Source: Monocercomonoides exilis PA203 (taxonomy: Eukaryota; Protista; Preaxostyla). From it: a DNA stretch of 64,000 nucleotides. Where the stretch lies: contig LSRY02000027.1 in assembly GCA_001643675.2 (NCBI GenBank), positions 1 through 64,000 on the forward strand, given 5' to 3'. Made by a program: the position numbers and the translations under genes. The notes beneath the pieces were generated by a model. That model ran no database searches, was not told the DNA's origin, and saw nothing but the letters and a program-made list of their open reading frames with translations. Each line of letters opens with the position of its first letter. Position 1 is the stretch's first letter. Of the stretch, positions 8,901 to 59,197 are shown piece after piece.

Positions 8901-11900
8901 GTGCACACCCCATGAGGTAAAATTATAAAAAATAGGAGAAAAAGGAGAGGAAAGAAAAGTGAGGGTGAGGTTGAGAGAGAGAGAGGGAAATGGATGGGTT
9001 GAGAGAAAGAGAGAGAGGAAAGAGTGGGGAGTCAGAGAGGTTGGGAGAGGCGAGTGCTGCACAGGGGCTGCACAGATGGTGCACAGCGCTGTAGCGCTCA
9101 TCCCTTCTTACTCGCCTTCACTCTGCGAATGAAGTGGGAGAGGGGAGTTGGGGAAGAGAGGAGAATGAGGGAGAAAGAGAGGTTAGAGAGGGAAGAGAAA
9201 AAAAGAATAAAAAAAAATCGTGTGGGATGAAGGGATGGAGAGAGAAGGATTTGGAGTGCAGGGATGGGGTGCACACCCTATGAGGTAAATTATAAAAAAT
9301 AGGAGAAAAAGGAGAGGAAAGAAAAGTGAGGGTGAGGTTGAGAGAGAGAGAGGGAAATGGATGGGTTGAGAGAAAGAGAGAGAGGAAAGAGTGGGGAGTC
9401 AGAGAGGTTGGGAGAGGCGAGTGCTGCACAGGGGCTGCACAGATGGTGCACAGCGCTGTAGCGCTCATCCTCTTACTCGCCTTCACCTGCGAATGAAGTG
9501 TGGGAGAGAGGGGAGTTGGGGAAGAGAGGAGAATGAGGGAGAAAGAGAGGTTAGAGAGGGAAGAGAAAAAAGAATAAAAAAAATCGTGTGGGATGAAGGG
9601 ATGGAGAGAGAAGGATTTGGAGTGCAGGGATGGGGTGCACACCCTATGAGGTAAATTATAAAAAATAGGAGAAAAAGGAGAGGAAAGAAAAGTGAGGGTG
9701 AGGTTGAGAGAGAGAGAGGGAAATGGATGGGTTGAGAGAAAGAGAGAGAGGAAAGAGTGGGGAGTCAGAGAGGTTGGGAGAGGCGAGTGCTGCACAGGGG
9801 CTGCACAGATGGTGCACAGCGCTGTAGCGCTCATCCCTTCTTACTCGCCTTCACTCTGCGAATGAAGTGTGGGAGAGAGGGGAGTTGGGGAAGAGAGGAG
9901 AATGAGGGAGAAAGAGAGGTTAGAGAGGGAAGAGAAAAAAGAATAAAAAAAATCGTGTGGGATGAAGGGATGGAGAGAGAAGGATTTGGAGTGCAGGGAT
10001 GGGGTGCACACCCTATGAGGTAAATTATAAAAAATAGGAGAAAAAGGAGAGGAAAGAAAAGTGAGGGTGAGGTTGAGAGAGAGAGAGGGAAATGGATGGG
10101 TTGAGAGAAAGAGAGAGAGGAAAGAGTGGGGAGTCAGAGAGGTTGGGAGAGGCGAGTGCTGCACAGGGGCTGCACAGATGGTGCACAGCGCTGTAGCGCT
10201 CATCCTCTTACTCGCCTTCACTCTGCGAATGAAGTGTGGGAGAGAGGGAGTTGGGGAAGAGAGGAGAATGAGGGAGAAAGAGAGGTTAGAGAGGGAAGAG
10301 AAAAAAAGAATAAAAAAAATCGTGTGGGATGAAGGGATGGAGAGAGAAGGATTTGGAGTGCAGGGATGGGGTGCACACCCTATGAGGTAAATTATAAAAA
10401 ATAGGAGAAAAAGGAGAGGAAAGAAAAGTGAGGGTGAGGTTGAGAGAGAGAGAGGGAAATGGATGGGTTGAGAGAAAGAGAGAGAGGAAAGAGTGGGGAG
10501 TCAGAGAGGTTGGGAGAGGCGAGTGCTGCACAGGGGCTGCACAGATGGTGCACAGCGCTGTAGCGCTCATCCCTCTTACTCGCCTTCACTCTGCGAATGA
10601 AGTGTGGGAGAGAGGGGAGTTGGGGAAGAGAGGAGAATGAGGGAGAAAGAGAGGTTAGAGAGGGAAGAGAAAAAAGAATAAAAAAAAATCGTGTGGGATG
10701 AAGGGATGGAGAGAGAAGGATTTGGAGTGCAGGGATGGGGTGCACACCCTATGAGGTAAATTATAAAAATAGGAGAAAAAGGAGAGGAAAGAAAAGTGAG
10801 GGTGAGGTTGAGAGAGAGAGAGGGAAATGGATGGGTTGAGAGAAAGAGAGAGAGGAAAGAGTGGGGAGTCAGAGAGGTTGGGAGAGGCGAGTGCTGCACA
10901 GGGGCTGCACAGATGGTGCACAGCGCTGTAGCGCTCATCCCTTCTTACTCGCCTTCACTCTGCGAATGAAGTGTGGGAGAGAGGGAGTTGGGGAAGAGAG
11001 GAGAATGAGGGAGAAAGAGAGGTTAGAGAGGGAAGAGAAAAAAGAATAAAAAAAATCGTGTGGGATGAAGGGATGGAGAGAGAAGGATTTGGAGTGCAGG
11101 GATGGGGTGCACACCCTATGAGGTAAATTATAAAAAATAGGAGAAAAAGGAGAGGAAAGAAAAGTGAGGGTGAGGTTGAGAGAGAGAGAGGGAAATGGAT
11201 GGGTTGAGAGAAAGAGAGAGAGGAAAGAGTGGGGAGTCAGAGAGGTTGGGAGAGGCGAGTGCTGCACAGGGGCTGCACAGATGGTGCACAGCGCTGTAGC
11301 GCTCATCCCTTCTTACTCGCCTTCACTCTGCGAATGAAGTGTGGGAGAGAGGGGAGTTGGGGAAGAGAGGAGAATGAGGGAGAAAGAGAGGTTAGAGAGG
11401 GAAGAGAAAAAAGAATAAAAAAAATCGTGTGGGATGAAGGGATGGAGAGAGAAGGATTTGGAGTGCAGGGATGGGGTGCACACCCTATGAGGTAAATTAT
11501 AAAAAATAGGAGAAAAAGGAGAGGAAAGAAAAGTGAGGGTGAGGTTGAGAGAGAGAGAGGGAAATGGATGGGTTGAGAGAAAGAGAGAGAGGAAAGAGTG
11601 GGGAGTCAGAGAGGTTGGGAGAGGCGAGTGCTGCACAGGGGCTGCACAGATGGTGCACAGCGCTGTAGCGCTCATCCCTTCTTACTCGCCTTCACTCTGC
11701 GAATGAAGTGTGGGAGAGAGGGAGTTGGGGAAGAGAGGAGAATGAGGGAGAAAGAGAGGTTAGAGAGGGAAGAGAAAAAAAGAATAAAAAAAAATCGTGT
11801 GGGATGAAGGGATGGAGAGAGAAGGATTTGGAGTGCAGGGATGGGGTGCACACCCTATGAGGTAAATTATAAAAAATAGGAGAAAAAGGAGAGGAAAGAA

Positions 11901-14900
11901 AAGTGAGGGTGAGGTTGAGAGAGAGAGAGGGAAATGGATGGGTTGAGAGAAAGAGAGAGAGGAAAGAGTGGGGAGTCAGAGAGGTTGGGAGAGGCGAGTG
12001 CTGCACAGGGGCTGCACAGATGGTGCACAGCGCTGTAGCGCTCATCCCTTCTTACTCGCCTTCACTCTGCGAATGAAGTGTGGGAGAGAGGGGAGTTGGG
12101 GAAGAGAGGAGAATGAGGGAGAAAGAGAGGTTAGAGAGGGAAGAGAAAAAAGAATAAAAAAAAATCGTGTGGGATGAAGGGATGGAGAGAGAAGGATTTG
12201 GAGTGCAGGGATGGGGTGCACACCCTATGAGGTAAATTATAAAAATAGGAGAAAAAGGAGAGGAAAGAAAAGTGAGGGTGAGGTTGAGAGAGAGAGAGGG
12301 AAATGGATGGGTTGAGAGAAAGAGAGAGAGGAAAGAGTGGGGAGTCAGAGAGGTTGGGAGAGGCGAGTGCTGCACAGGGGCTGCACAGATGGTGCACAGC
12401 GCTGCAGCGCTCATCCCTTCTTACTCGCCTTCACTCCGCGAATGAAGTGTGGGAGAGAGGGGAGTTGGGGAAGAGAGGAGAATGAGGGAGAAAGAGAGGT
12501 TAGAGAGGGAAGAGAAAAAAAGAATAAAAAAAATCGTGTGGGATGAAGGGATGGAGAGAGAAGGATTTGGAGTGCAGGGATGGGGTGCACACCCTATGAG
12601 GTAAATTATAAAAAATAGGAGAAAAAGGAGAGGAAAGAAAAGTGAGGGTGAGGTTGAGAGAGAGAGAGGGAAATGGATGGGTTGAGAGAAAGAGAGAGAG
12701 GAAAGAGTGGGGAGTCAGAGAGGTTGGGAGAGGCGAGTGCTGCACAGGGGCTGCACAGATGGTGCACAGCGCTGTAGCGCTCATCCTCTTACTCGCCTTC
12801 ACTCTGCGAATGAAGTGTGGGAGAGAGGGAGTTGGGGAAGAGAGGAGAATGAGGGAGAAAGAGAGGTTAGAGAGGGAAGAGAAAAAAAGAATAAAAAAAA
12901 ATCGTGTGGGATGAAGGGATGGAGAGAGAAGGATTTGGAGTGCAGGGATGGGGTGCACACCCTATGAGGTAAATTATAAAAAATAGGAGAAAAAGGAGAG
13001 GAAAGAAAAGTGAGGGTGAGGTTGAGAGAGAGAGAGGGAAATGGATGGGTTGAGAGAAAGAGAGAGAGGAAAGAGTGGGGAGTCAGAGAGGTTGGGAGAG
13101 GCGAGTGCTGCACAGGGGCTGCACAGATGGTGCACAGCGCTGTAGCGCTCATCCCTCTTACTCGCCTTCACTCTGCGAATGAAGTGTGGGAGAGAGGGAG
13201 TTGGGGAAGAGAGGAGAATGAGGGAGAAAGAGAGGTTAGAGAGGGAAGAGAAAAAAAGAATAAAAAAAATCGTGTGGGATGAAGGGATGGAGAGAGAAGG
13301 ATTTGGAGTGCAGGGATGGGGTGCACACCCTATGAGGTAAATTATAAAAAATAGGAGAAAAAGGAGAGGAAAGAAAAGTGAGGGTGAGGTTGAGAGAGAG
13401 AGAGGGAAATGGATGGGTTGAGAGAAAGAGAGAGAGGAAAGAGTGGGGAGTCAGAGAGGTTGGGAGAGGCGAGTGCTGCACAGGGGCTGCACAGATGGTG
13501 CACAGCGCTGTAGCGCTCATCCCTCTTACTCGCCTTCACTCTGCGAATGAAGTGTGGGAGAGAGGGGAGTTGGGGAAGAGAGGAGAATGAGGGAGAAAGA
13601 GAGGTTAGAGAGGGAAGAGAAAAAAAGAATAAAAAAATCGTGTGGGATGAAGGGATGGAGAGAGAAGGATTTGGAGTGCAGGGATGGGGTGCACACCCTA
13701 TGAGGTAAATTATAAAAATAGGAGAAAAAGGAGAGGAAAGAAAAGTGAGGGTGAGGTTGAGAGAGAGAGAGGGAAATGGATGGGTTGAGAGAAAGAGAGA
13801 GAGGAAAGAGTGGGGAGTCAGAGAGGTTGGGAGAGGCGAGTGCTGCACAGGGGCTGCACAGATGGTGCACAGCGCTGTAGCGCTCATCCTCTACTCGCCT
13901 TCACTCTGCGAATGAAGTGTGGGAGAGAGGGAGTTGGGGAAGAGAGGAGAATGAGGGAGAAAGAGAGGTTAGAGAGGGAAGAGAAAAAAAGAATAAAAAA
14001 AAATCGTGTGGGATGAAGGGATGGAGAGAGAAGGATTTGGAGTGCAGGGATGGGGTGCACACCCTATGAGGTAAATTATAAAAAATAGGAGAAAAAGGAG
14101 AGGAAAGAAAAGTGAGGGTGAGGTTGAGAGAGAGAGAGGGAAATGGATGGGTTGAGAGAAAGAGAGAGAGGAAAGAGTGGGGAGTCAGAGAGGTTGGGAG
14201 AGGCGAGTGCTGCACAGGGGCTGCACAGATGGTGCACAGCGCTGTAGCGCTCATCCCTTCTTACTCGCCTTCACTCTGCGAATGAAGTGTGGGAGAGAGG
14301 GGAGTTGGGGAAGAGAGGAGAATGAGGGAGAAAGAGAGGTTAGAGAGGGAAGAGAAAAAAGAATAAAAAAAATCGTGTGGGATGAAGGGATGGAGAGAGA
14401 AGGATTTGGAGTGCAGGGATGGGGTGCACACCCTATGAGGTAAATTATAAAAAATAGGAGAAAAAAGGAGAGGAAAGAAAAGTGAGGGTGAGGTTGAGAG
14501 AGAGAGAGGGAAATGGATGGGTTGAGAGAAAGAGAGAGAGGAAAGAGTGGGGAGTCAGAGAGGTTGGGAGAGGCGAGTGCTGCACAGGGGCTGCACAGAT
14601 GGTGCACAGCGCTGCAGCGCTCATCCCTCTTACTCGCCTTCACTCTGCGAATGAAGTGTGGGAGAGAGGGGAGTTGGGGAAGAGAGGAGAATGAGGGAGA
14701 AAGAGAGGTTAGAGAGGGAAGAGAAAAAAAGAATAAAAAAAAATCGTGTGGGATGAAGGGATGGAGAGAGAAGGATTTGGAGTGCAGGGATGGGGTGCAC
14801 ACCCTATGAGGTAAATTATAAAAAATAGGAGAAAAAGGAGAGGAAAGAAAAGTGAGGGTGAGGTTGAGAGAGAGAGAGGGAAATGGATGGGTTGAGAGAA

Positions 14901-17900
14901 AGAGAGAGAGGAAAGAGTGGGGAGTCAGAGAGGTTGGGAGAGGCGAGTGCTGCACAGGGGCTGCACAGATGGTGCACAGCGCTGCAGCGCTCATCCCTCT
15001 TACTCGCCTTCACTCTGCGAATGAAGTGTGGGAGAGAGGGGAGTTGGGGAAGAGAGGAGAATGAGGGAGAAAGAGAGGTTAGAGAGGGAAGAGAAAAAAA
15101 GAATAAAAAAAATCGTGTGGGATGAAGGGATGGAGAGAGAAGGATTTGGAGTGCAGGGATGGGGTGCACACCCTATGAGGTAAATTATAAAAATAGGAGA
15201 AAAAAAGGAGAGGAAAGAAAAGTGAGGGTGAGGTTGAGAGAGAGAGAGGGAAATGGATGGGTTGAGAGAAAGAGAGAGAGGAAAGAGTGGGGAGTCAGAG
15301 AGGTTGGGAGAGGCGAGTGCTGCACAGGGGCTGCACAGATGGTGCACAGCGCTGTAGCGCTCATCCCTCTTACTCGCCTTCACTCTGCGAATGAAGTGTG
15401 GGAGAGAGGGAGTTGGGGAAGAGAGGAGAATGAGGGAGAAAGAGAGGTTAGAGAGGGAAGAGAAAAAAAGAATAAAAAAAAATCGTGTGGGATGAAGGGA
15501 TGGAGAGAGAAGGATTTGGAGTGCAGGGATGGGGTGCACACCCTATGAGGTAAATTATAAAAAATAGGAGAAAAAGGAGAGGAAAGAAAAGTGAGGGTGA
15601 GGTTGAGAGAGAGAGAGGGAAATGGATGGGTTGAGAGAAAGAGAGAGAGGAAAGAGTGGGGAGTCAGAGAGGTTGGGAGAGGCGAGTGCTGCACAGGGGC
15701 TGCACAGATGGTGCACAGCGCTGTAGCGCTCATCCCTTCTACTCGCCTTCACTCTGCGAATGAAGTGTGGGAGAGAGGGGAGTTGGGGAAGAGAGGAGAA
15801 TGAGGGAGAAAGAGAGGTTAGAGAGGGAAGAGAAAAAAAGAATAAAAAAAAATCGTGTGGGATGAAGGGATGGAGAGAGAAGGATTTGGAGTGCAGGGAT
15901 GGGGTGCACACCCTATGAGGTAAATTATAAAAAATAGGAGAAAAAGGAGAGGAAAGAAAAGTGAGGGTGAGGTTGAGAGAGAGAGAGGGAAATGGATGGG
16001 TTGAGAGAAAGAGAGAGAGGAAAGAGTGGGGAGTCAGAGAGGTTGGGAGAGGCGAGTGCTGCACAGGGGCTGCACAGATGGTGCACAGCGCTGCAGCGCT
16101 CATCCCTCTTACTCGCCTTCACTCTGCGAATGAAGTGTGGGAGAGAGGGGAGTTGGGGAAGAGAGGAGAATGAGGGAGAAAGAGAGGTTAGAGAGGGAAG
16201 AGAAAAAAAGAATAAAAAAAATCGTGTGGGATGAAGGGATGGAGAGAGAAGGATTTGGAGTGCAGGGATGGGGTGCACACCCTATGAGGTAAATTATAAA
16301 AAATAGGAGAAAAAAGGAGAGGAAAGAAAAGTGAGGGTGAGGTTGAGAGAGAGAGAGGGAAATGGATGGGTTGAGAGAAAGAGAGAGAGGAAAGAGTGGG
16401 GAGTCAGAGAGGTTGGGAGAGGCGAGTGCTGCACAGGGGCTGCACAGATGGTGCACAGCGCTGTAGCGCTCATCCCTCTTACTCGCCTTCACTCTGCGAA
16501 TGAAGTGTGGGAGAGAGGGAGTTGGGGAAGAGAGGAGAATGAGGGAGAAAGAGAGGTTAGAGAGGGAAGAGAAAAAAGAATAAAAAAAATCGTGTGGGAT
16601 GAAGGGATGGAGAGAGAAGGATTTGGAGTGCAGGGATGGGGTGCACACCCTATGAGGTAAATTATAAAAATAGGAGAAAAAGGAGAGGAAAGAAAAGTGA
16701 GGGTGAGGTTGAGAGAGAGAGAGGGAAATGGATGGGTTGAGAGAAAGAGAGAGAGGAAAGAGTGGGGAGTCAGAGAGGTTGGGAGAGGCGAGTGCTGCAC
16801 AGGGGCTGCACAGATGGTGCACAGCGCTGCAGCGCTCATCCCTCTTACTCGCCTTCACTCTGCGAATGAAGTGTGGGAGAGAGGGGAGTTGGGGAAGAGA
16901 GGAGAATGAGGGAGAAAGAGAGGTTAGAGAGGGAAGAGAAAAAAAGAATAAAAAAAATCGTGTGGGATGAAGGGATGGAGAGAGAAGGATTTGGAGTGCA
17001 GGGATGGGGTGCACACCCTATGAGGTAAATTATAAAAAATAGGAGAAAAAAGGAGAGGAAAGAAAAGTGAGGGTGAGGTTGAGAGAGAGAGAGGGAAATG
17101 GATGGGTTGAGAGAAAGAGAGAGAGGAAAGAGTGGGGAGTCAGAGAGGTTGGGAGAGGCGAGTGCTGCACAGGGGCTGCACAGATGGTGCACAGCGCTGT
17201 AGCGCTCATCCCTTCTTACTCGCCTTCACTCTGCGAATGAAGTGTGGGAGAGAGGGAGTTGGGGAAGAGAGGAGAATGAGGGAGAAAGAGAGGTTAGAGA
17301 GGGAAGAGAAAAAAAGAATAAAAAAAATCGTGTGGGATGAAGGGATGGAGAGAGAAGGATTTGGAGTGCAGGGATGGGGTGCACACCCTATGAGGTAAAT
17401 TATAAAAAATAGGAGAAAAAAGGAGAGGAAAGAAAAGTGAGGGTGAGGTTGAGAGAGAGAGAGGGAAATGGATGGGTTGAGAGAAAGAGAGAGAGGAAAG
17501 AGTGGGGAGTCAGAGAGGTTGGGAGAGGCGAGTGCTGCACAGGGGCTGCACAGATGGTGCACAGCGCTGCAGCGCTCATCCCTCTTACTCGCCTTCACTC
17601 TGCGAATGAAGTGTGGGAGAGAGGGGAGTTGGGGAAGAGAGGAGAATGAGGGAGAAAGAGAGGTTAGAGAGGGAAGAGAAAAAAAGAATAAAAAAAAATC
17701 GTGTGGGATGAAGGGATGGAGAGAGAAGGATTTGGAGTGCAGGGATGGGGTGCACACCCTATGAGGTAAATTATAAAAAATAGGAGAAAAAGGAGAGGAA
17801 AGAAAAGTGAGGGTGAGGTTGAGAGAGAGAGAGGGAAATGGATGGGTTGAGAGAAAGAGAGAGAGGAAAGAGTGGGGAGTCAGAGAGGTTGGGAGAGGCG

Positions 17901-18712
17901 AGTGCTGCACAGGGGCTGCACAGATGGTGCACAGCGCTGTAGCGCTCATCCCTTCTACTCGCCTTCACTCTGCGAATGAAGTGTGGGAGAGAGGGAGTTG
18001 GGGAAGAGAGGAGAATGAGGGAGAAAGAGAGGTTAGAGAGGGAAGAGAAAAAAAGAATAAAAAAAATCGTGTGGGATGAAGGGATGGAGAGAGAAGGATT
18101 TGGAGTGCAGGGATGGGGTGCACACCCTATGAGGTAAATTATAAAAAATAGGAGAAAAAGGAGAGGAAAGAAAAGTGAGGGTGAGGTTGAGAGAGAGAGA
18201 GGGAAATGGATGGGTTGAGAGAAAGAGAGAGAGGAAAGAGTGGGGAGTCAGAGAGGTTGGGAGAGGCGAGTGCTGCACAGGGGCTGCACAGATGGTGCAC
18301 AGCGCTGTAGCGCTCATCCCTTCTTACTCGCCTTCACTCTGCGAATGAAGTGTGGGAGAGAGGGAGTTGGGGAAGAGAGGAGAATGAGGGAGAAAGAGAG
18401 GTTAGAGAGGGAAGAGAAAAAAAGAATAAAAAAAAATCGTGTGGGATGAAGGGATGGAGAGAGAAGGATTTGGAGTGCAGGGATGGGGTGCACACCCTAT
18501 GAGGTAAATTATAAAAAATAGGAGAAAAAGGAGAGGAAAGAAAAGTGAGGGTGAGGTTGAGAGAGAGAGAGGGAAATGGATGGGTTGAGAGAAAGAGAGA
18601 GAGGAAAGAGTGGGGAGTCAGAGAGGTTGGGAGAGGCGAGTGCTGCACAGGGGCTGCACAGATGGTGCACAGCGCTGCAGCGCTTCATCTTTCTACTCGC
18701 CTTCACTCTGCG
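2963..18712. repeat. Subtelomeric tandem satellite, ~369-bp unit, ~43 copies
   Basis: Near-identical unit GGGATGAAGGGATGGAGAGAGAAGG...GCGAGTGCTGCACAGGGGCTGCACAGATGGTGCACAGCGCTG(C/T)AGCGCTCATCCC...ATCGTGT recurs every ~368-370 nt. The plus strand is strongly purine-rich. The last unit diverges after CACTCTGCGA at ~18712. Confidence 0.99.
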
Positions 18713-19208
18713 ATTCGAAGTCTCGCCAAAAACGATGCTTCGCATGTTTTTCGCTCGACTTTGTACTCGAGTTCAGGCTCGCAAAACTTTCAATACTTAT
18801 TTAATGTTTTTATTTTTATCAATTATCATTATTATTTCATATTTATTGCAATTGTGTATTTTTATAATTTTTATTTCTTTATTTTTCGAATATTTCAATA
18901 ATGAACTCAAATAATAATGAATTATTAATCAAAGAATGTAATGAACAATATTTGTAGTTAATATTTATCGATAATTAATTATTGTATTTTATTAATTAAT
19001 TTTTTTCGATATTAGTTTAATTTATTCATAGATACCACAATTTAATTTATGAAAATATCAATTTTCCCTTAAATTGAAATGAAAAATATAACTAAAAAGG
19101 GTTGCCATTTTTTTGGTGTTACGAAATTGTGAACATATAGAAATGTTGTCAAGAAATTATGTTAAATTTGTCCCACATCCAAAGTGCACAGCGCAGTTTA
19201 ATAAATCG

Positions 19209-21864
19209 ATGTCCAGAAGCGTTATGAGCGACAGTGAAGATGGTTCCATATCGAAAACTGTTTTGATCTCATCCAAGCCAAAGTTCAGAACTCCTTTGAT
19301 GAAGAAGATCTCACAGTTTGAATCAGAGAGCAAAGTCAAAGAAGAAATGCAGAAGCCAATGGAAAGCAAGAAGAAGAAAGAGGTGTTCGTGATAGATTTA
19401 TCTGAAGATTCAGACATTGAAGGCGATTCGTGTAGCATGGAAACATTGAGTTCTTCTTCATCATCTGAATCGGAATATGCCTTTGACCTGAGAAAGATGC
19501 GAAAGATAAAAATTAAAAATCATTCAGGTTGTCGCAAGATTGTTAAGAAAGATGACACAACCGATTTCACTGAAAGCAGTTCTTCGGGTTCGATGGAAAA
19601 GTGCAGACAAATTGGAAAGAAGAAACAGAAGAAGTCTAGTTCAATAAAGACTGCGAAATTAAAAGGAAAGACAGAGCAGATAAAGGTGAGTTCTGAAGGT
19701 TCATTGATATCAGCATTGTTGAAGCAGAATGTGGAAAACAAGCAGTTTGATCTGAATGAAGGAAAAGAAAGATCATCAATGCATGAAGTTATCACAGAAT
19801 CAATCAGAATAGATGATAAATTGGAAGTTAAAGGAAAAGATCAAGAGAAACCTTCAAGTTCTCAAAAGACTCTTGGGAAGAACAGCATCAGGAAGGTTGC
19901 AATTCAAAGGAAAACGAAAGTGTTTCAAAAACGAATGAACTGTCGGAACAAGCAATATCTGAAGGTTATGAGAAGTGCATTTGTCCTGTTAGCACACCAA
20001 TTTCTAATCGTTCTGTCAATGAATTTGATACAATAAAAAAAATAAGATCGATGTCTGAAGATGAATTGAATTCTTTTGAAGAGCCAGGAGCAGTGTATAG
20101 CGAGTCAACACTTAAAAAACATGCATGGGTTCAAAAGGTTTATGATGCATTTTGTGAAATGAAAGATATGAATGGATTTCCATTGGATGAGAAGAACATC
20201 ACATCCTTTCTCCGATTTTGTTACAGAAGTCGCATTTACACCAGAGATACAGTGGAAAATGTCTTTGCTTGTAGCTTAAAACGTATAAATACGGAAATTA
20301 CTGGACAGAGGTTAACAGAAGAAGTCAGAGATGCAATTTCACTCGTTATAAAGGAAGGGCGAGTGGATAAAGGTGTTAAGCCGAACGGATGTGGAAAAGA
20401 ACCATGCCTTTTGAAGGACGTGGAAAGAATCGTTGAAAATACAAGTGACTTGCATCCAGACAAAGCTATGGAGGCTTCACTGTGGTTGACAGCAGTTTCC
20501 ACGGGTGCGAGAGCTGTCACAATGTGCAACGTGCTGTTATCAGACATAGGTGTTATTCTTGATGCAGTGGGGAAAGACACAAAAGTTCTCAAAATGAAGT
20601 TTCGAGTAACCAAAGGGAATATCAGGTGGAACCATGATGTCACATTGGAAGGCAATCTTGAAGAGAGGACAAATACGAATGTGTTATATTGGTTGAACGA
20701 GCATTTGAAGAAAAGCTTTAAATTGGATCTTCATAATCGAGATTGTTGGGTTCTCACAGAAACGCAAAAGGAACAAAAAATATGGAATTGGAGAAGAGAT
20801 TCCATGTCAATGCGGTTGAGGCTACGAGCAAGAGCAGCGGGATATCCAATTAACCTTTTTCGTTCCATTCTTTTAGAAGTGGATTCATGTGTTCGGCTCT
20901 TTTAGCAACAGGTTTGGATGCACATTCGCGCGACTCAACTTTCACATTCACAGCTGCAATTGCGGGATGGGTTCCCAATTCTGCTGTGCAGCAAAGATAT
21001 GCAAAGAATGCAATATCTGCCACAATCGTTTCAAGCAGAATTGGGAATCCAGACGTTGATGGAAAAGAAGTGATAGAAAAAGCATTGTTGGATATTGAAG
21101 TTTTCCACAACATCAAGTTAGATAAAAATTGCAATCATAACGTTAGCGATCGTTTTGCAGTGCGGAAGGTTCGGATATATTTCAAAAGCAGGATTGCTGT
21201 AAATGGCATAACAGGATCAAATGAAAAAACGACAAAGAAGAAACGATATTATTACAAACAACGTGCATGGAGGTCAGCTATTTGCAGCTATGTCAAGAAT
21301 GACGCAATGATGGAGAGAAACGCATATGAAATATATTCAAAACATAAAAACTTCAAAAAATCGAGATGTCGACATTCAACAATTTTGAATGGCAGAATGG
21401 AAGTTGGATTGAGAAAGATTGCGCAAAGGATTGAAGAGGGAGAAGACGAAAATAAGATAGCGGAGGAGTTGATTGAGTTAGTGGACAAAGAGGAGATGGA
21501 AGGGAAAAAGGAAATGAAGCAAATAAAGAGAAAAAAGGTGTATAATTATGACGCAGCACTGCAGAGGGAGAGAGATGAAAATGGAAGGAGAAAGAGATTG
21601 AGATGGAGCGAGGAAGAAGATGAGACATTGAAAAGGATGCGGAAGGAAGGAAAGAGTTACTCGGAGATGGCGGAGGAGCTTAGGATTAGATTACCGACAG
21701 ACTGCAGAGACAGATTGATAAACTTGGGTTTGGTTGAAGGATGGACAACTATGGCAGGGCTGAAGATGAGAACGAGGAAGACATTGATTGAGCATGTCAA
21801 AGAAGAAGTTCTGAAGGATGAAAAACAAACTGAGAGTGAGGATAAAGAGAAGGATGAAAAGTAA
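19209..21864 (+). CDS. Tyrosine recombinase with low-complexity N-terminus and C-terminal Myb/SANT-like domain (copy 1; two apparent frameshifts)
   Basis: ORFs 19113-20036, 20051-20905 and 20887-21864 join through two frame changes. The frame of the 20051 ORF is open back to ~19832. Adding one T to the run at 20856-20860 gives NLFSFHSFRSGFMCSALL. Catalytic motifs: TGAR (20501-20512), TKGN, HSFR (20866-20877), AGW, QRY (Tyr 20998-21000). Myb-like RKRLRWSEEEDETL...RLPTDCRDRLINL at ~21589-21726. The start at ATG 19209 is a best guess. Confidence 0.85.
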
Positions 21865-22114
21865 TTACAGAAGGTTCGCACATGCAATGCTGTGCGATAA
21901 TCACTCAATTTACCTTTTTATTTATTAATTTTCATTTTGACGATCGCAGTTTTTCAAGTTAGATTAATTCTTCATTGACTTTTATTGTTTAATCCAATTT
22001 GATATTTGCGCTTTTATTTTCGCATTTAGCGAGTTCACAAGGTTTTATTTGAAATATAAATAATCCAAATTAAATGTAAAATGCACTTTTCTTTATTTTC
22101 GCACATTCTTAAAA

Positions 22115-22300
22115 TTGCGCAACTGTGTAAGTTAGATGACACCGTCAGTTGTGATAACGCGCGCACTTTATCAAAATGAATTCGACGAAGTTGAATTCAT
22201 TTTGACTGTAAACGAAGCCCAATGGGGAGGAGGCTTCGATTACAGGTGCGCGCTGGGGTGGGTGGGAGGACAGCGCGCCAGAGCCTCCCATAATGGGAGA
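22115..22300. ncRNA. GC-rich multi-hairpin structured element (ncRNA or ssDNA structure), function unknown
   Basis: 13-bp perfect stem 22171-22183/22193-22205 extended to a cGAAg loop. Further stems at 22206-22219/22232-22245, 22159-22166/22246-22253, 22248-22255/22271-22278 and 22285-22291/22293-22299. Confidence 0.45.
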
Positions 22301-23495
22301 TTTTTGTGAAAAATGCACTTTTAAAGGCCACTTTTCTTTGTCAATTTTTCTTTTTTTTTGGCTAATTCTTCAAATTTTTTTGAAAAAATTTCCTGTCATA
22401 ATCGGTAATTTCAATAATTTCAGATAAATAAATTTATCTATGTTTCGTGATAATTGTAATTTCATTGGGTTGATTTGATTTTCATGATTCACATATATGA
22501 TTTCAATAATTATTATAAATCATATCATTGTTTTATTATCTTTTCCTGATAATTTTAATATATTGAATATTCAATTTGAAATTCATTTGCGATAAAGAAA
22601 TTAAGTTTGAAAGATTTGAAACATTTACAAACTGATACCAAAGTGATTGATCACTTTTCCTTTTCATTTAAATTTCATTCTTTTGGATAAATGAAAATAA
22701 ATAGGTTGACTCTTCAAACAAAAATTCGAAAGATATCATGAAAGTTAATTAAGATCGAAGAAAATAAATATGATTGAGCACATTCATGTGAACACATTCA
22801 TATAATTGACAACCACATGGGTTAATATTCAAGCTATGTTGAACAACATTCATGGATTAAAGCAACAATTTCTTAAATAATAACACTTTGGGATATTAAA
22901 ATGTAGTCAAATGGGTTCAAATCACGAAATGTTTTTGAAGAAAGTTAAGATAGACTAATGGGAGATCAACATTTTGTCACATGGCCGATCTAACTCTAAC
23001 ATATTTTTTCCTATTTTATAAAAAATAAATTTATTAAAAAAATGAATATTTTTGGGTTAGAATGACAATAATAATAAGCAATTAATTAATTTTTAATTTT
23101 TTCTTTTTTTCTCCAATATTATATTATTACACACAACACACAACTAGCACACTGGTATAATATCTCCCTCCAATTCAGTCTTCCCAGTGAGATATAAATT
23201 ATTTTTTATTTTTCTTCATTGATAAAAATCGAAGGTTATTTTGATATATAATGCTATATAATTTACCATACACTTATTATAGATGAAAAACATGACTAAT
23301 AAACAAAATACTAATTCATAATTTCACTAATGTGTAGTATCAAATCACTCAAAAATACACTTTTCTTAGGACTTCTTACAAAAAGTGATAATCGTAGGTT
23401 CTTGTCAAAAATTGATGTCAAAATGATACTAAAATTACGTACAATGTGTTGATGATAACATGTGCTAACCCCCACTTTTTTTCCATGCACAGATG

Positions 23496-23527
23496 AACCC
23501 CTAACACTAACCGAACCTAACCTAGGG
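23496..23527 (+). repeat. Degenerate interstitial telomere-like tract ending in AACCTAACCTAGGG
   Basis: AACCCCTAACACTAACCGAACCTAACCTAGGG. The last 14 nt are identical to the telomere/satellite junction at 2952-2965. Confidence 0.7.
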
Positions 23528-23559
23528 CCAGGAATGGAAAAAGAGAAAAAAGAGATTTT

Positions 23560-23865
23560 TTTGGGTTAACCCACACAGGAGGGTCTGTTTGGCAGGGCCC
23601 AGGCCCTGTGAAAAGGCAGGAATTGAGGTTTTAGAAGGCGTCCGCTCCGCGTCCGCCTTCTACGAAGGCCACATACTGCCTATAGGGGCACCCCCATGAA
23701 ACTCGAGGGGAAGGCAAATTTTTTTCCAAAAAATTAACTCAAAAAATGACTGAAAAATCATAAAAAATTATGTTTTTCCCCTGGATTCCGGAATGATAAA
23801 TTCCAAATGGTAGTCAATACTAGAGTTGTACCGCACTCCGTAACCCTAACCTAGTTTTGAAATTC
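23560..23865 (+). ncRNA. Candidate structured RNA with telomere-template-like motif (possible telomerase RNA); boundaries unknown
   Basis: GC-rich hairpins: CAGGGC/GCCCTG at 23593-23608 and TAGAAGGCG/CGCCTTCTA at 23632-23662. They are followed by TAACCCTAACCTAGTTTTGAA (23841-23861), whose tail matches variant repeats in the telomere. Confidence 0.35.
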
Positions 23866-24914
23866 ACAGTCATTCGATAAAATTAAGGATTATGTCTCAA
23901 ATGGATAATAGCAAAATTCATATATAATTAATATTGAAAGTGTAATGTGTGAGAAGTTTCTTTCTTTGATTGTTAGAGTTTGAAATTTATTTCTTATTTC
24001 TCAAGCAACTTCATATGAAAGATCTTTTATGAACGAATGGAAAAATCAAAATTCTACACAGTTATAGAAGCCAATAGAAAATAATGTTATCCTTTTTCAT
24101 TTCAAAGAAGCTCAGCGTTTGCCATTAAGTTTCTGTTGAATCAAAAGGAAACTTAAATTCTGAAAAAACTCTCCGAATCTTTGTTCGAAATGAACATTCC
24201 TGTTTGTGCTCGGATTGATTGAACCCTCCAATTCAATAGTTTTTCTTATTAAAGTCTGACTTTGTAATTGTTTCCGTAAGCATCGTTATTTTTCAATTTA
24301 AATATTTCTGAAATTCTTTTCTTCATTCGCAATATTCATCAAATCAATCATTATTTTTTCCATTTAATTTTTGCATAAATCAAATATTAAATTATTTTCA
24401 GCATCAACAGTGTAATTTTATTCATTTTCAAGCACATATATCTTTAATCATTTCATCCATCTGATTCGATATTCAACTGTTGCATTCAAAGATTATCGAT
24501 TCATCTTCCTTCAAGCATAAATCATTTTCCACAATCAATATTACCATGTCTGCAATCAACAAGCCATTTGTGAAACTCAATAAATGCTTCGTTTGTTCCT
24601 TTACAGCAAGCATCACATATCAATCATCAATCCAACAATTGTCCATTTCATTTAGCATTGAAACATTCAATGTTCTGATGTTGTTTATTAGCCTTAACCA
24701 TGTTGTGATTATGCTTTTGATTTTCTCACGAGATCGCTTTTTCAATGTTAATCAATCAGACTTTCACAACTATTGAAATGATTCTCACTGCACAAAGCAA
24801 ACACAATTCATAATTAACTTATTAGAAACATGCACATATTGATATTTCTTTCTCTCATGCAGCATTCTTCTGATTGTCACGTGTCTTTAATCAAATTCAG
24901 TATCAAATAGAATA

Positions 24915-25364
24915 CAGTCTAAACCGGATATAATCACGTCGAATATAATCACATTCGTTTATTGTCACATTTCTCGATGCACCGAGATTTTTTGCTTGTT
25001 TTTCATTCATTTTTCATCGCATATAATCACAGGGCTGAATATATATAATCACATTTTGTTTCATTATGGGTGGATTTTTCAATGAAATTTTGAATTTTTG
25101 ATCAAAAATCTCATTTTTTTGATTTCACGAAATAATGTTTTAATAAGTCTAAATAACATAATAAAACATTAAAAATTGTTATTTCGATTGAAAAATGTGT
25201 GGTTGTGTGGGATTATATAAAATGGAAAAATTTATCCAAAATAAATTATTTCAAAAATTAATTTTTATTTTCTTCTGTGTAAAGCATCATCGTGTATAAT
25301 CACAATCGGATATAGTCACAAAAAGTTGTGCAAAAACCGATGTGATTATATCCGGTTTCGACTG
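24915..25364. mobile_element. Non-autonomous Tc1/mariner-superfamily (pogo-like) MITE, ~450 bp
   Basis: Inverted termini TACAGTCTAAACCGGATATAATCACGTCG (24913-24941) and CGATGTGATTATATCCGGTTTCGACTGTA (25338-25366) match at 27/29 positions including the flanking TA (putative target duplication). TATAATCAC recurs subterminally. No ORF. Confidence 0.85.
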
Positions 25365-25728
25365 TAGTAGCCTACGGAAATGTTTTCCCCGCAACAAAAA
25401 AATCAAAGAGATAGCAAACGTTTGATTGTTTGAACAATGAATTATTCATCCATCTTTTCGTACTTTCTATATTTTCACTTCGAAATGTTTGATTATTAAG
25501 AATGAAACAATGAAACATGATATCTTTTTATAATTTTCTGTAAACAGCAAATAAAAACAAGCAATCCAATACAAAGAGAAATTTGCAGTTTAATTGTTCG
25601 AAAAAGAAAAAGGTTATCAACATTATGATATCAAAGAAATTGTGACAGATAAGGAGTTCACACTGAAAAGAATGAAATTCTGCAAATATGTCTTTCAGTC
25701 TTTTTCACTCGCTTGCTTTCATGTTCGT

Positions 25729-28700
25729 TTATGCCTTTGCATTTTCCACATCTTCGTATTCATCACCCATTTGCAGTAAATCCAAAACGTTCTCCGGGAA
25801 ATCCAAATTAGCATCGTCGTTGTGTTCAGCCTTGATTTTTTTGAGAATGTTCCTTAATCTGTCGCGGCAAGAGTTTCCTGATCTGCACTTCAACTCTTTG
25901 CTTATTTCTTCGAAAGATTTATTGTCCAGCAATCCTTTCATCAAAACATCATCTTCCATTCGAGTCCACTTGATTCTTGTCTTGCAACTTGTTATTGGAT
26001 TCACTTCTCTGTTCTCTTTGAGCTTTTCCTTTGGCTTAAAGTTTGAAACTTCTAACATGATCTTTCCATCAAGATAGTCATCTATTTGCGATAGATATTC
26101 ATTTGCCAAGTTTATCAAATCTCCGCCACTGGTCTTAACGAGTTGTAGAATATACTCCTTGCATGCATGAATAGCTGTTTGATTCTTCTTTCTTTTAATA
26201 TCATGTGCCTTTACAAACTTTGCAGCTGCCATCGAATGCAATTTGGAGATATACGAAGATGGATATCCAAATTTCCAACAGGTGAACTTAATGATTTGCA
26301 AGACGTAAAATCGAAATGTATCCAAAATGCTTTCTATTCTCCATTCACTCCTTGTGATTTCGACATTATGGAAAACAGTTGGGTTTGACAAATCCAAGGC
26401 AAACGGCTCCTCAGACTCCAATACATCGTTAGGAAAATTTGTTCGGTTGGAAATTATAGTTGCTTTTGTTGTTCTGCTCACATACTCCTCCTCTGTTGGT
26501 CCGCCAAACTTCCACTTCGCAATAAATGAAGCAGTTTCAAGAACGCTTTCTCTCTTTAAAGGATTGTTCCCAATTTTCAAAAGAGCGGAACAAAGAAACC
26601 CTGATCGTAAAGAGTGGAAGCCAAAAAGCTTATCGGGATAGCCTGCCTGTTTTGCCCTCTTCTGTATCCTCACTCTCATTGCACCTTTGCGCAAGCCCCA
26701 TACGCGCTCCTAAGCTAATTCCCTCAGGTCCCATTTATCAAACTGTGTTAGAGACAGACCGAATTCTTGCACTAAGTATTCTTCGAACCACCAAATGAAA
26801 TTCAAGCTGCTTTTTGAACAAATGTCCCCCTCCAGGGTCACGCAATGGTCATCCATTCTGTACCCTTTTCCACATTCAACATTAAACGTAACCTTCAGAA
26901 AGGTTGAACCTGGCTTGGCGAACATCCGAACGATATCTTTCATCTTCACCATTGAACACGTTATGCTTCTGGAACCTGTCGACAAAGCAAAAATAAAAAG
27001 GGATGCTTCCCTTGGCTTCTCCAACACCCAGTCTGGAATACATCCAATAATTCTTTCAAGATCTCCGACAATTAAAGGCTCCTTCTTTTTGGATTTAATC
27101 AAATTTGCTCCTCCTTTTGTATCAATATTGAAGTGATACAGTTTTGTCTTCGCAGCACGAATCTCACTCATTGCTTGCTTCACAGCAAGCTTCACCTTCA
27201 CACTGACGGATGAATCAGATTGACTTTCAGAAAGAAAATACAAACTTGGGATGATAGAAGCACACAGAGACTTCACTGAATAACGAAGTCCAATTCCCAA
27301 AAGCTTGAGAAATCCATATGTTGGATCTTCCTCCAATGGCCAGGTTGGAAAATGAAACTTTTCACAAAACAAACAAAACATTCCCCTCATCCATTCATGA
27401 CTTTTCGATGTTTCTCCGTATGTTGGTGTCCCTCTTTTGATATATGTTTGTAAAGTCTCCGCGCTGTAAGTTCTGAGTGCATTAGATAATCGATTTGGTG
27501 TGTCGTAGACAAAGCGTGGAGAATCCATCGCTGGTGTGGAAGATCCAGTTGAAATCAAATCCAAAGGCCTGAACTCTTCGTCTTGTTCATAACCATACAA
27601 TTCCTTTCTTGTTTTTCTCACTCTGAAAGCTTCATCAGTTGTAATTTGCTCAATAAATGTGTACGGTTTCTTTCTTGACATATTCAATTTGTGCAACAGA
27701 GCACTTTTCGTCTTAGCCGTGTCAAAAACAGTCCTTCGCTTTTTCTTTTCCTTTTTCTTCAGAAATGATCTTTGTTTCTTTTGTTTTCTTCCTTTCACTT
27801 TTGAAATTTCCAAATCTGAACTTGCAATGCTTCCACAATTTTCCTGCGAACTCTCATTTTCTTCTTCATCATTATCTATCAGCATGATCTCTTTATCTTC
27901 AGCGGTTTGTTTTCTATCCATTTCATCCACTGATGGCTTTCTCTTCTTTCCCTTCGAACTTTTGACATTCACTTTTTCACCATGAAGAACCTTTCTGATA
28001 TCGATAAAAGTTAGGTTCTGAAGTTCTTCATTGACCTGCAAACGTTAAACTCTTTCTGTTGAAATGTCATTATTTGCTATTTCCTTATCATGATTTTCTT
28101 TCTCTGACTGTCTTCTTGTCGATATGGTTGAGAGTTTGGATGCAGAATATATTTCGGATGAAGAACGCCTTTGTTTGTACACTCTCTTCTTTTCCGTTTC
28201 ATCCACCTTTTGGTATTTCTTCAATGTTCCTTCGATGATTTTAGCGGTTCTGCTTTTCTTCGGTCGTCCTCTTTTTTTTCTCTTAATACAGGTTTTCTTC
28301 AATTCTTTGATGTTCTTTTCCTGTTTTTTGGAATTGTTGGGATCTTCCGTTTCTGATTGCTCTTCCAGCTGAACAATTGTAACGTTTGAAATCGTTGCAC
28401 CACATATTTTGTCCTTCAAAGCATTAAAATCGTTAACATGCATGAGTTGCTGCTCAAAAATAGAAATCAGCTCCTCGAAATTATCGTAACTCATTTGATT
28501 TATCGTGTTCTCCTTTGAAAAAGATTGATTAACATGTTGCGATGAACAAATATTGAAACAATATTGATCTTTATCGTTGCAAAACTCTTTCCGAAATTCT
28601 TTGTATTCGGCTTTTCGTGTTATCTCAGGGTAAATATGTTTCCTTGACCCATTTGTGGCTTCTGTTGCATTTGCAGTTCTTTGCATAAATTGGAAATGAC

Positions 28701-29430
28701 TCGAAAACATTTCTGGACATGCACAAACAGATGCAGATGAATATCCAACAAGTGAATCCGAAAATGTTGATGACTGTGCATAAGGATCGCTCCTATCAGA
28801 ACTTTTATTCATTCCTTTCGATTCAGATTCTTCAGAATAGAAAGTCTCAGTTGATGAATTCGTCTCCTCCTCATTTGATGACTGTAAAGATTGTTCTGTT
28901 GTTTCATTTTCTTTGTTGTTGTCGGAACTGAGTTTGTCTGGAAATTCGTCTGTTGAAGAATTTTCTATGTTGTCAATCTTTCTTTTCATTCTCTCTGCGC
29001 AGAGCTCGTCAAGATTTTCTTTCCTAACGGAAAACAGCGGCCTTGGGAAAATGCTTTTATGTGCGCACTCACGAATGCAATCCAAAGATATTTGCTCTGG
29101 ATACTGTTCCAAGACGGTTGAGTTAAAATCAAATTTGGGTAAGGAATCATCATTTTTCAAATTCATAAGCCACTGCGAGATTGAAGATATTTGGTCAGCA
29201 TTGTCCATTTTTTTCTTTTTGGCTTTTTCCTTTTGAGCAGCATTGTTTGCAATCCTTTCAAGCGATGGAGTGGAAATGACATCGTCAAAGCTACTGAATT
29301 GAACGGTTGAAGATTGACGAAGTGGGGACATTGGCGGGCTGATGAAGAAAGGAGAAGATGGAGCAGATATTGCATTTAAACGAATGGAAGGAGTGTGATG
29401 AGGGGTTGTTGTTGGAGTGAGTTGCGGCAA
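25729..29430 (-). pseudogene. Tyrosine recombinase with C-terminal Myb-like domain (copy 2); single reading frame interrupted by two in-frame stops
   Basis: ORFs 28045-29430, 26710-28041 and 25729-26694 share one frame, separated by TAA (28045-28047) and TAG (26710-26712). Motifs KEPLIVGDLERII, EASLFIFALSTGSRSIT, HCVTLEGD, AGYPDKLFGFHSLRSGFLCSALL, AKW and EEY align with copy 1. Myb-like KTRIKWTRMEDDVL...RSGNSCRDRLRNIL. The true 5' end lies upstream and is unresolved. Confidence 0.8.
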
Positions 29431-30827
29431 ACGGCAGAAATCTGGCTGCGAAGGCGATGCAACTCCTTTCTGCGCTCTTCTTTCGTCTTCCTTTTGATTT
29501 GTGATTTCTTGATTTCGTTCTTTATAGAAAATAAATTGCCTATAATAAAAACGAAAGAAATCATAAACAAACTGTAGAAATTCATTGTATTTTTGCTTAT
29601 TATTGAATAAACGAATTGAATTTTTAACAGTGAAAAATGCTTTGCATACTATTTATCTCCAGCGTATCGGAATCTTCTTAACATTGCAATCTTTCAAATC
29701 CGAAAAAAGAACAGGAAAAATAGATAAATTGTGAGAAATTTATATCAAAGAAATGTTCCAAACTTATTTTTATTAAATGTTCTTCAAAAATTAACAAGAT
29801 ATAAATTGGATTTATCAGAAAAATTTATATCCTTGGAAGTGATCAAGATAGATGGAGATAATGGTTTGTTCCGCAACATATTAAGGTCATGATCAATCAA
29901 TTATTCTTTTGTTTCAGATTTTTCCAAAGAGGAAAATTAGCGTATCAGATGTTGTCGATATTGAACAAGAGTTAATTTTTAAGTATGTTGGCTATATTGT
30001 AATTAAAAAAATATTGATTTTGATTCAATTTTTTGATTAGTTCGTTTTTCAATTTTCCAGAGCTCGATCATGAATTTGCAAGTGAAACGAAGTGGAATTT
30101 CTGTTTATCAGGAAAGTCAACTGAAAGGCAGATAAGATTTCATCAGAAAGAAAAGCTGAACTTTATGATACAAGTTTGCCAAATTTTGTTGATTTATCTT
30201 TGAAAGTGAATAGTAAATTCTTTTTATCAGTATTCATGGTTAGGAGTTAGATCATAAAGCTGTTTTCAGGCAAATTAATCTGTTCTTTTTATGAAAACCG
30301 AATATTTTCATTGACGAATGAAAACAATAAGATTTTATGTTTCCATTTAATCAAATAAAGAAAAAATCAATATTTTTGTATGTTAATGCAGTTTACTCAT
30401 CTCATTCGTTTTTAAAAAAACACTTTATTCATGTTAATAACAAAGCATTTTTAAAATAATCATCATATTTTATGAAAAAAAAAGGATTTCTCAGACAATA
30501 ATTAATTTTCCACAATCAAAACATATATTTCATTGAAAAATAACATTTTCAAATTATTCCAAAAAGTTTTGGAGCAAAAAGCGGGAAAGATCGGAAGCTT
30601 TATTATTTAAATTAGGTTAGCAGTATTAAAGACCCACAACTTCATTTGAATTTTGCCGGTCAACCGTCCAACCAATTTCCACAAAAAATATATCAAACGA
30701 TTGATAAATCTTTGTTCTTAATTTCCATTTCAACCACCACATTTATAAGTCCTTCAAACCCTTCAAATTCTCAGTTTAGGTTAAACTTTTTTTCTAACCT
30801 AATTTGGTGAAGAAGAGATGGTGAACA

Positions 30828-31500
30828 ATGAGAAGAAGAAGGGGGAAAGGAAGTTATGTTAGAGATGATGAAAGAGAGAAAGAAAAAGATGAGTTTCAGT
30901 TTGAGAAAAAATTGAAAGCTGTTCAGAGGAAGCAATTGGTGAAAGAAAAGAAAATTTTGATGGACAGAAAGAGAGCTAACAAGAATTATTCAATTGGAAG
31001 AAGAGAAAGGTTGCCAAAAAGAAACAGAATGCGAATATATCTTCAGAAGTCTATCTATAACACAAAAAATTCCTGAAAATGATGAAATCAAAGAAAACGA
31101 AAGAGCTTCTTTAAGAAAAATGCAGATGATACTGAAAGAGATAACAGAAAAGAAAAAATGGAAAAAGAATGATACAAACCAACAAAAACGAGAAAGTTGT
31201 TTTATTTGTGCAAATAGAAAGAAAGAAGAGAGTGTTTGGGAGGCTTGTGGAAGGAAAGAGAGGAAGGAGCTGTTCTGCTGGAAGTGAAAAACAAGATGAA
31301 TGAGGATCATTACCAGAACAAAGAGATGATCAAGAAGCTGACAGAGCTGGAGTGAGCAGAAGTCACGAAAGACTGAGAAGAGATTGACGAGCAGATAAAA
31401 CGAATACTGACTGCGAAGAACATGGTCTAAGGAGAACAGAAGAAGATCCAGGAGCTGGTAGAGGCAAGCTGAAAGACAAGAAAAAGAAGAAAGTGCATGA
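30828..31500 (+). pseudogene. Fragmented charged/coiled-coil coding-like sequence
   Basis: Short E/K/R-rich ORFs in shifting frames with many stops; no recognisable family. Confidence 0.25.

Positions 31501-59150: not shown

Positions 59151-59197
<47 letters not shown>

What the first reader, a model, noticed from the sequence alone, without database searches (positions are those of the whole stretch)
23841..23861. Template-like motif whose 3' flank is copied into the telomere: candidate telomerase RNA locus
Seen: the spacer contains TAACCCTAACCTAGTTTTGAA. The telomere has two rare interruptions with the same non-telomeric tail: TAACCCTAACCTAGTTTGAA (2202-2221, one T fewer) and CTAACCTAGTTTAACCC (1371-1387). 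Known: TTAGGG telomerase RNAs carry a ~1.5-2-repeat C-strand template such as CUAACCCUAAC, and the primer anneals at the template's 3' side. Inference: if this is a plus-strand RNA, occasional primer annealing further 3' (on the U4 or GAA) would copy exactly these variants. Annealing on CCUAG would give TTAGG pentamers and the CCTAG seen at the 2962 junction. Telomerase RNAs are poorly characterised in many protist lineages.
Basis: partly seen in the sequence, partly recalled or inferred. Interest (0 to 1): 0.85.

Follow-up and report, generated by a model that had tools for sequence, protein, structure and literature searches.

The report
Telomerase-written scar, not telomerase RNA gene
The template-like 21 letters at 23841 are real, but they sit on the seam between a subtelomeric repeat and a mobile element and are not detectably transcribed; they look like an old product of telomerase, while the likely telomerase RNA gene lies on another contig.

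Summary
The same variant recurs genome-wide: the 17-mer with three T occurs at 148 telomeric sites, against 0 for the control pattern.

The interpretation does not hold for this locus.
- The motif is chimeric. Its first 15 nt end a multi-copy subtelomeric repeat module. Its last 6 nt begin a ~7-kb element whose other copy, on contig C34, has unrelated DNA upstream.
- It has four T. Telomeres carry three T about 15 times more often.
- Its downstream flank is AT-rich and folds no better than shuffles (z +0.54).
- Four RNA runs lay no contig on 21500-26500.

Those same runs hold 90% of the words of a mid-chromosome locus, C13 at about 635,031-635,365. That locus has the exact three-T motif inside a GC-rich island with fold z -4.19, so it is the better telomerase RNA candidate.

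Every other copy of the 20-mer lies within 24 kb of a contig end, in telomere orientation. I read the window's motif as a buried junction scar that telomerase wrote at least in part, resembling vertebrate TERC-ITS.

Earlier agents of this scan reached a telomerase RNA candidate from other windows. Their notes give no coordinates, so I cannot confirm it is the same locus.

The parts
1..2962 (+). Terminal telomere, C-strand (CCCTAA)n, with variant units at 1371-1387 and 2202-2221
   Evidence: variants recurrent genome-wide
2963..18721 (.). 369-bp subtelomeric satellite, about 43 copies, joined to the telomere through CCTAG
19113..21864 (+). Three adjacent ORFs; the last has a weak C-terminal Myb match (22.7 bits, below Pfam's 24.4-bit cut-off). 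Earlier notes call this a recombinase-Myb gene; the recombinase part was not tested here
22454..23855 (+). Mosaic of multi-copy subtelomeric repeat modules: C47-type, the C26 1.06-kb satellite unit, and C15/C10 copies. Homology to them stops exactly at 23855
23498..23527 (+). Degenerate telomere-like relic inside the repeat mosaic, ending in CCTAGG
   Evidence: the same position is degenerate in C26 units
23528..23840 (+). Module A, a GC-richer (44%) repeat unit with at least 40 partial copies near chromosome ends
23841..23855 (+). Telomere-like tail of module A (first 15 nt of the finding). Perfect as far as TAACCCTAACCT in C10, diverged in C15 and in 11 C26 units
23856..23861 (+). Last 6 nt of the finding (TTTGAA). 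This is the first bases of the ~7-kb element; the C34 copy reads TTCGAA after unrelated upstream DNA
23856..30799 (-). About 7-kb repeated element carrying the second set of ORFs with a Myb domain (25729-29430, minus strand). Second copy at C34:42515-49009, 98% then 93% identical
24915..25364 (.). 450-bp insert absent from the C34 copy, with terminal inverted repeats (MITE-like)

Best explanation
The 21-mer is a buried junction, not a gene. Its first 15 nt (two telomere units plus TAGT) are the proximal tail of a subtelomeric repeat module. Its last 6 nt are the terminus of a ~7-kb element that carries ORFs with a Myb domain. It resembles the telomere variants because both trace to the same source. 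Telomerase in this organism sometimes starts copying about 9 nt 3' of its normal template, on an RNA whose best candidate gene lies mid-chromosome on contig C13. This writes ...CCTAGTTTGAA at new telomere/non-telomere junctions and inside telomeres. When satellite units and mobile elements later pile up distally, such junctions are left behind as short interstitial copies. Shown: the seam, the copy numbers, the orientation, the lack of RNA contigs here, and their presence at C13. Inferred: that telomerase wrote the tail, and that the TTTGAA of the element end served as microhomology to the RNA's UUUGAA, or was joined there by chance.
For: Seam: homology to repeat modules ends at 23855, and homology to C34:42515 onward begins at 23856. 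The C34 copy has unrelated upstream DNA. Module A ends in the same telomere-like tail in C10, in C15 and in 11 units of C26, each followed by different DNA. All copies of the 20-mer except C13 lie within 24 kb of a contig end and in telomere orientation. Genuine telomere/unique junctions carry the same motif. The three-T form outnumbers the four-T form 148 to 10 in telomeres. The C13 locus has the exact three-T motif in a 44% GC island between 27% GC flanks, fold z -4.19, and 0.90 of its words are held in 4 RNA runs. The same runs lay 0 contigs on window 21500-26500. The window's downstream flank folds at z +0.54. C13 and the window share only 22 nt. A subtelomeric copy on C33 matches C13 for 29 nt, including 8 nt of flank that the window lacks. 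The TERT RNA-binding domain is present.
Against: The RNA evidence is assembled contigs of four small runs from one study. Absence there is weak, and the flanking genes gave no positive control. Module A plus the motif folds well (z -3.5), so an RNA with a 3'-terminal template is not excluded by structure alone. The exact history cannot be resolved between healing of the element end, insertion of the element next to an older scar, and chance juxtaposition of the last 6 nt. No clean empty site exists. That C13 is the telomerase RNA is itself unproven.
Confidence: 0.8

Rival explanations
1. One reading: window 23841-23861 is the template of the telomerase RNA, read from the plus strand, and its 3' flank is copied into telomeres.
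For: The template-like 11 nt plus flank match the telomere variants at 20 of 21 positions. The motif with these flanks is single-copy. The four-T form does occur in telomeres. The upstream 313 nt plus motif fold at z -3.5.
Against: No RNA contig lies on it in runs that hold the C13 locus. The motif straddles a seam between a repeat present in at least 40 copies and an element whose other copy lacks the motif. The four-T form is the minority, 10 against 148. The downstream flank is AT-rich with z +0.54. Paralogous copies of the upstream module carry a decayed 'template'. One intratelomeric variant on C32 and the C33 copy carry GAAT, as in C13, where this locus has GAAA.
Confidence: 0.03
2. Attachment-site reading: the ~7-kb element integrates site-specifically into the telomerase-written variant unit, and the motif is one recombinant junction.
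For: The element's two ends read TT(T/C)GAAATTCA and ...TCTAACC. Joined, they would resemble the variant unit CTAACC-TAG-TTTGAA. Earlier notes describe the Myb-domain ORFs as fused to a tyrosine recombinase, but only the Myb domain was seen here.
Against: The other junction of the element (about 30799) is not followed by the expected remainder of a variant unit or by telomere repeats. The C34 copy sits in a non-telomeric context. Only two copies are available. The recombinase domain was not confirmed here.
Confidence: 0.08
3. Pure juxtaposition: the repeat tail and the element terminus came together by an unrelated rearrangement, and the match of the last 6 nt to the variant is chance.
For: The two halves belong to different repeat families. 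The T-run is one longer than in the common variant. The C34 copy reads TTCGAA.
Against: By my rough estimate, a 5-6 nt continuation of a 15-nt match, allowing one indel, has odds of about 1 in 100 to 1 in 1000. The same full motif marks many genuine telomere/unique junctions.
Confidence: 0.09

Closest known systems
TERC-ITS: interstitial telomeric repeats flanked by sequence retrotranscribed from telomerase RNA (vertebrates; PMC2246262, PMC8537989)
   Same: A short telomere-like stretch sits directly next to letters that match the RNA just beside the template, at a non-terminal site, and is interpreted as written by telomerase.
   Different: Here the sites are subtelomeric and in telomere orientation, and the telomeric part is under two repeats. 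The RNA-derived part lies 3' of the template. No clean empty orthologous site is available. The telomerase RNA itself is only a candidate.
De novo telomere addition (chromosome healing) junctions, as studied in yeast, Plasmodium and human cells (e.g. PMC5550746, PMC7018233; titles and abstracts only)
   Same: A non-telomeric end joins telomerase-made sequence, with possible short homology between the DNA end and the RNA. The same motif marks genuine telomere/unique junctions in this genome.
   Different: The junction is now 23.8 kb inside the chromosome and retains only 11 nt of telomere repeat. The first-round product includes 9 non-repeat letters.
Telomerase RNA genes (vertebrate TERC, ciliate and plant TRs, trypanosome TER)
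   Same: About 1.8 C-strand repeats that could act as a template.
   Different: No transcript found, no structured core downstream, no match in Rfam, and a chimeric repeat context. The C13 locus fits these features better.

Membership tests
Telomerase RNA gene | Template complementary to at least 1.5 telomere repeats | tested here: met
   TAACCCTAACC at 23841-23851. On its own this is a weak criterion: the same 11 nt end several repeat modules.
Telomerase RNA gene | Expressed as a stable RNA | tested here: not met
   0 contigs of 4 RNA runs on window 21500-26500. The same runs hold 0.90 of the words of the C13 locus. These are contigs only, so absence is weak evidence.
Telomerase RNA gene | Structured core (template/pseudoknot and stem-terminal element) contiguous with the template | tested here: not met
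   The 335 nt from 23810 fold at z +0.54 with 28% GC downstream. Upstream plus motif folds at z -3.5, but that is a multi-copy repeat. No Rfam match.
Telomerase RNA gene | Template flank matches the predominant telomere variant | tested here: not met
   The locus has four T then GAAA. Telomeres have three T at 148 sites against four T at 10. The extended copies with GAAT match C13.
Telomerase RNA gene | One coherent gene, not a seam of unrelated repeats | tested here: not met
   Breakpoint at 23855/23856 between the repeat module and the element shared with C34.
Telomerase RNA gene | Physical and functional association with TERT | not testable with these tools
   TERT is present at C36:2215302. 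Binding needs a RIP or reconstitution experiment.
TERC-ITS-like telomerase-written interstitial site | Telomere-like repeats adjoining sequence identical to the telomerase RNA next to its template | tested here: met
   21 of 22 positions match the C13 candidate RNA. This is conditional on C13 being the telomerase RNA.
TERC-ITS-like telomerase-written interstitial site | Inserted in one step, shown by an empty orthologous or paralogous site | tested here: inconclusive
   The C34 paralogue of the right flank lacks the motif, but its left flank is unrelated, so it is not a true empty site.
Healed chromosome end (de novo telomere addition junction) | Telomere orientation, subtelomeric position, and the same junction motif as at live telomere starts | tested here: met
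   Plus strand, 23.8 kb from the left end. Sister copies on C33, C41, C10, C15 and C26 all lie within 7 kb of an end in matching orientation. Live junctions on C21, C39, C45, C47, C56 and C62 carry the motif.

The most novel reading that the evidence does not exclude
The window motif and its sister copies (C33, C41, C10, C15/C26) are fossil chromosome ends. At each, telomerase made about one pass over an extended 20-nt template before a subtelomeric module or recombinase-type element was added distally. Chromosome ends in this oxymonad would then grow by alternating telomerase seeding and module capture. These would be the first TERC-ITS-like scars outside vertebrates.
Probability: 0.2. Interest if true: 0.55.

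Novelty: new member of a known kind. Interest (0 to 1): 0.3.

Why it matters
For this locus the result is mostly negative: it is a decoy that could mislead a template-based search for the telomerase RNA. It has two uses. First, it shows that in this genome a template-like word is not enough. The true source has to explain the dominant three-T variant, be transcribed, and lie outside subtelomeric repeats. Only the C13 locus does all three. Second, it adds internal, oriented copies of the telomerase-written motif as independent support for an extended template. No telomerase RNA is described for metamonads in the library I could search; a 2024 review states that the Giardia RNA is still unknown (PMC10999387). 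Earlier agents of this scan had already proposed a telomerase RNA candidate from other windows.

Tried and rejected
- Rfam, at gathering threshold on the whole window and at E up to 1 on the two loci, found nothing.
- A DNA comparison of the first ORF block and its downstream spacer (18701-23860) with the element (23856-31000) gave no hit, so the spacer is not an inverted repeat around the motif.
- The post-tail flank of the C10 copy looked similar by eye to the window's flank. It is not significant: 385 of 2000 shuffles did as well.
- A simple attachment-site model for the 7-kb element predicts a matching half-site at its other end. None was seen.
- The letter after GAA at junctions (T at 10 of 16 sites, A at 6) was considered as a discriminator. 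In an AT-rich genome it is too weak, so only the C32 and C33 cases were used.
- Conservation in relatives could not be tested, because the genome collection holds no relatives of this organism.
- The ends and strand of the C13 RNA, and the raw-read support for the T-run at 23855-23858, were therefore not examined.

Full report
**Observation.** The window begins with a 2.96-kb C-strand telomere. The two interruptions are at 2202-2221 and 1371-1387. Within the window the shared 8-mer is not beyond chance: 3 found, 1.87 expected.

The window is contig C22:1-64000 of an 82.3-Mb, 101-contig assembly. That size and contig count match the published long-read assembly of Monocercomonoides exilis (PMC8767320), and earlier scan notes name the same organism.

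Genome-wide the variant is a real, recurrent feature:
- The 17-mer CCTAACCTAGTTTGAAC occurs 148 times, control 0. It is always on the plus strand at left contig ends and on the minus strand at right ends.
- The form with four T occurs 11 times, ten of them in telomeres.
- The shorter variant CCTAACCTAGTTTAACCC occurs at 9 ends.

The variants are genuine as far as an assembly can show.

**What the locus is.** I searched the genome with window 23530-24500.
- The left part (23530-23855) matches about 40 places near contig ends. These include tandem arrays with periods of about 1.04-1.38 kb, a copy at C15:3134-3457 (86%) and a copy at C10 (85%).
- The right part, from 23856 on, matches a single other place, C34:42515 onward, at 98-99%.
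- Direct comparison shows that window 23856-24914 and 25365-30799 correspond to C34:42515-49009 (98% then 93%). The window copy carries an extra 450-bp insert.
- Upstream of C34:42515 the sequence is unrelated, and the C34 copy reads TTCGAA where the window reads TTTGAA.
- Window 22454-23855 is a mosaic of subtelomeric repeat modules, and their homology stops exactly at 23855.

The 21-mer is therefore chimeric. Fifteen letters are the tail of a repeat module ('module A', 23528-23855). Six letters are the first bases of a ~7-kb element that carries the second set of ORFs with a Myb domain.

Module A ends in the same telomere-like tail elsewhere. The tail is perfect as far as TAACCCTAACCT in C10, and it has two changes in C15 and in eleven units of a C26 satellite. 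Each time it is followed by different DNA. The apparent similarity of the C10 flank to the window's flank is not significant. A functional template would not be expected to sit on such a seam, nor to have decayed copies in sister repeats.

**Expression and structure.**
- The 335 nt starting at 23810 fold no better than shuffles (z +0.54). The downstream flank is 28% GC.
- The upstream module plus motif does fold well (z -3.5), but it is a multi-copy repeat.
- Four RNA runs from one study lay no contig on window 21500-26500. This is weak as a negative, because these are contigs of small runs and the flanking genes are not covered either. It is informative by contrast with the next point.

**The better source.** I searched for the three-T motif followed by a non-C base. 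It returned 16 places: three lie inside telomere tracts, most of the rest are telomere/unique junctions or subtelomeric copies, and one is deep in a chromosome, C13:635066 on a 1.597-Mb contig.
- There the exact motif, preceded by G as in the window, opens a 335-nt island of 44% GC between 27% GC flanks.
- It lies in an intergenic gap.
- It folds at z -4.19, and no shuffle did as well.
- The same four RNA runs hold 0.90 of the sampled words of C13:635,005-635,395. The silent 5 kb of the window serves as the control against DNA carry-over.
- C13 and the window share only 22 nt.

Three further points favour C13 over the window as the template.
- Three T outnumber four T by 148 to 10 in telomeres.
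- A subtelomeric copy on C33 matches C13 for 29 nt, that is the 20-mer plus 8 letters of C13's flank.
- One intratelomeric variant on C32 reads GAAT followed by GTAACCC. This fits C13's GAAU and the G before its template, whereas the window has GAAA.

The TERT RNA-binding domain is present at C36.

**Mechanism.** Shown: the motif marks live telomere/unique junctions on several contigs (C21, C39, C45, C47/C56, C62). Every copy with non-telomeric DNA on both sides, other than C13, lies within 24 kb of a contig end and in telomere orientation.

Inferred: telomerase can align a DNA end on the GAA or U-run 3' of the normal template, and one pass then writes the 20 letters. At new ends this produces the junction. 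Inside telomeres it produces the variant unit.

The window motif is then a former junction, buried when satellite units and elements accumulated distally. The element terminus TTTGAA is complementary to what the RNA's UUUGAA would template. It may have served as microhomology for healing, or it may have been joined to an older scar. I cannot tell which, and about one chance in ten remains that the last six letters match by accident.

**Comparison with known systems.** The closest described kind is the vertebrate TERC-ITS. These are interstitial telomeric repeats flanked by sequence retrotranscribed from telomerase RNA at break sites (PMC2246262; PMC8537989). The window's motif shares the architecture with that class but not the setting. 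It is subtelomeric and oriented, it has under two repeats, and the RNA-derived part lies 3' of the template. The defining empty-site test is inconclusive here. As a telomerase RNA gene the locus fails four tested criteria and passes only the template word.

**Novelty.** No telomerase RNA of a metamonad appears in the searchable library. A 2024 review says the Giardia RNA is unknown (PMC10999387). The C13 candidate would therefore matter, but earlier agents of this scan had already proposed such a candidate from other windows. Their notes give no coordinates, so I cannot confirm that it is the same locus. This finding's own locus is a decoy, of modest interest as a TERC-ITS-like scar in a protist.

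**Limits.** There was no raw-read check of the T-run and no strand or end information for any RNA. No relatives were available for covariation, and the recombinase domain of the elements was not tested. Telomere repeats were used only as short patterns within this genome.

Noticed in passing
G000:C13:635031-635365 (L006:1466-1800): GC-rich (44% against 27% flanks), strongly folding (z -4.19) intergenic island. It begins with the exact three-T template-plus-flank motif, and four RNA runs hold 90% of its words. It is the best telomerase RNA candidate seen here.
   Followed up: partly
window 23856-30799 and G000:C34:42515-49009: A ~7-kb element with sharp boundaries in two copies (98% then 93% identity), carrying minus-strand ORFs with a Myb domain. 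Its ends read TT(T/C)GAAATTCA and ...TCTAACC, both reminiscent of the telomere variant unit.
   Followed up: partly
window 24915-25364: A 450-bp insert absent from the C34 copy, bounded by inverted repeats of about 25 bp. It looks like a MITE.
   Followed up: no
G000:C33:1052677 (L009), 6.7 kb from the contig end: An interstitial copy of the 20-mer between genes. It continues for 8 more letters identical to the C13 flank, after one extra T. That is a longer retro-copy of the candidate RNA, or a hint that the C13 assembly lacks one T after GAA.
   Followed up: partly
G000:C10 right end, C15 left end, C26 right end (L042, L044, L055): Subtelomeres are built of modules that each end in the same short telomere-like stretch (TAACCCTAACC or decayed forms of it). 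In C26 these modules are amplified as a 1.06-kb tandem unit.
   Followed up: partly
window 2305-2313: Another isolated telomere interruption (CTAACTTTTAACCC) that the extended-template register does not obviously explain.
   Followed up: no
window 46013-62926 (-): A single uninterrupted ORF of 5637 aa with internal low-complexity repeats.
   Followed up: no
window 1-360: The distal-most part of the telomere is much more degenerate than the rest. This may be read-end error in the long-read assembly.
   Followed up: no
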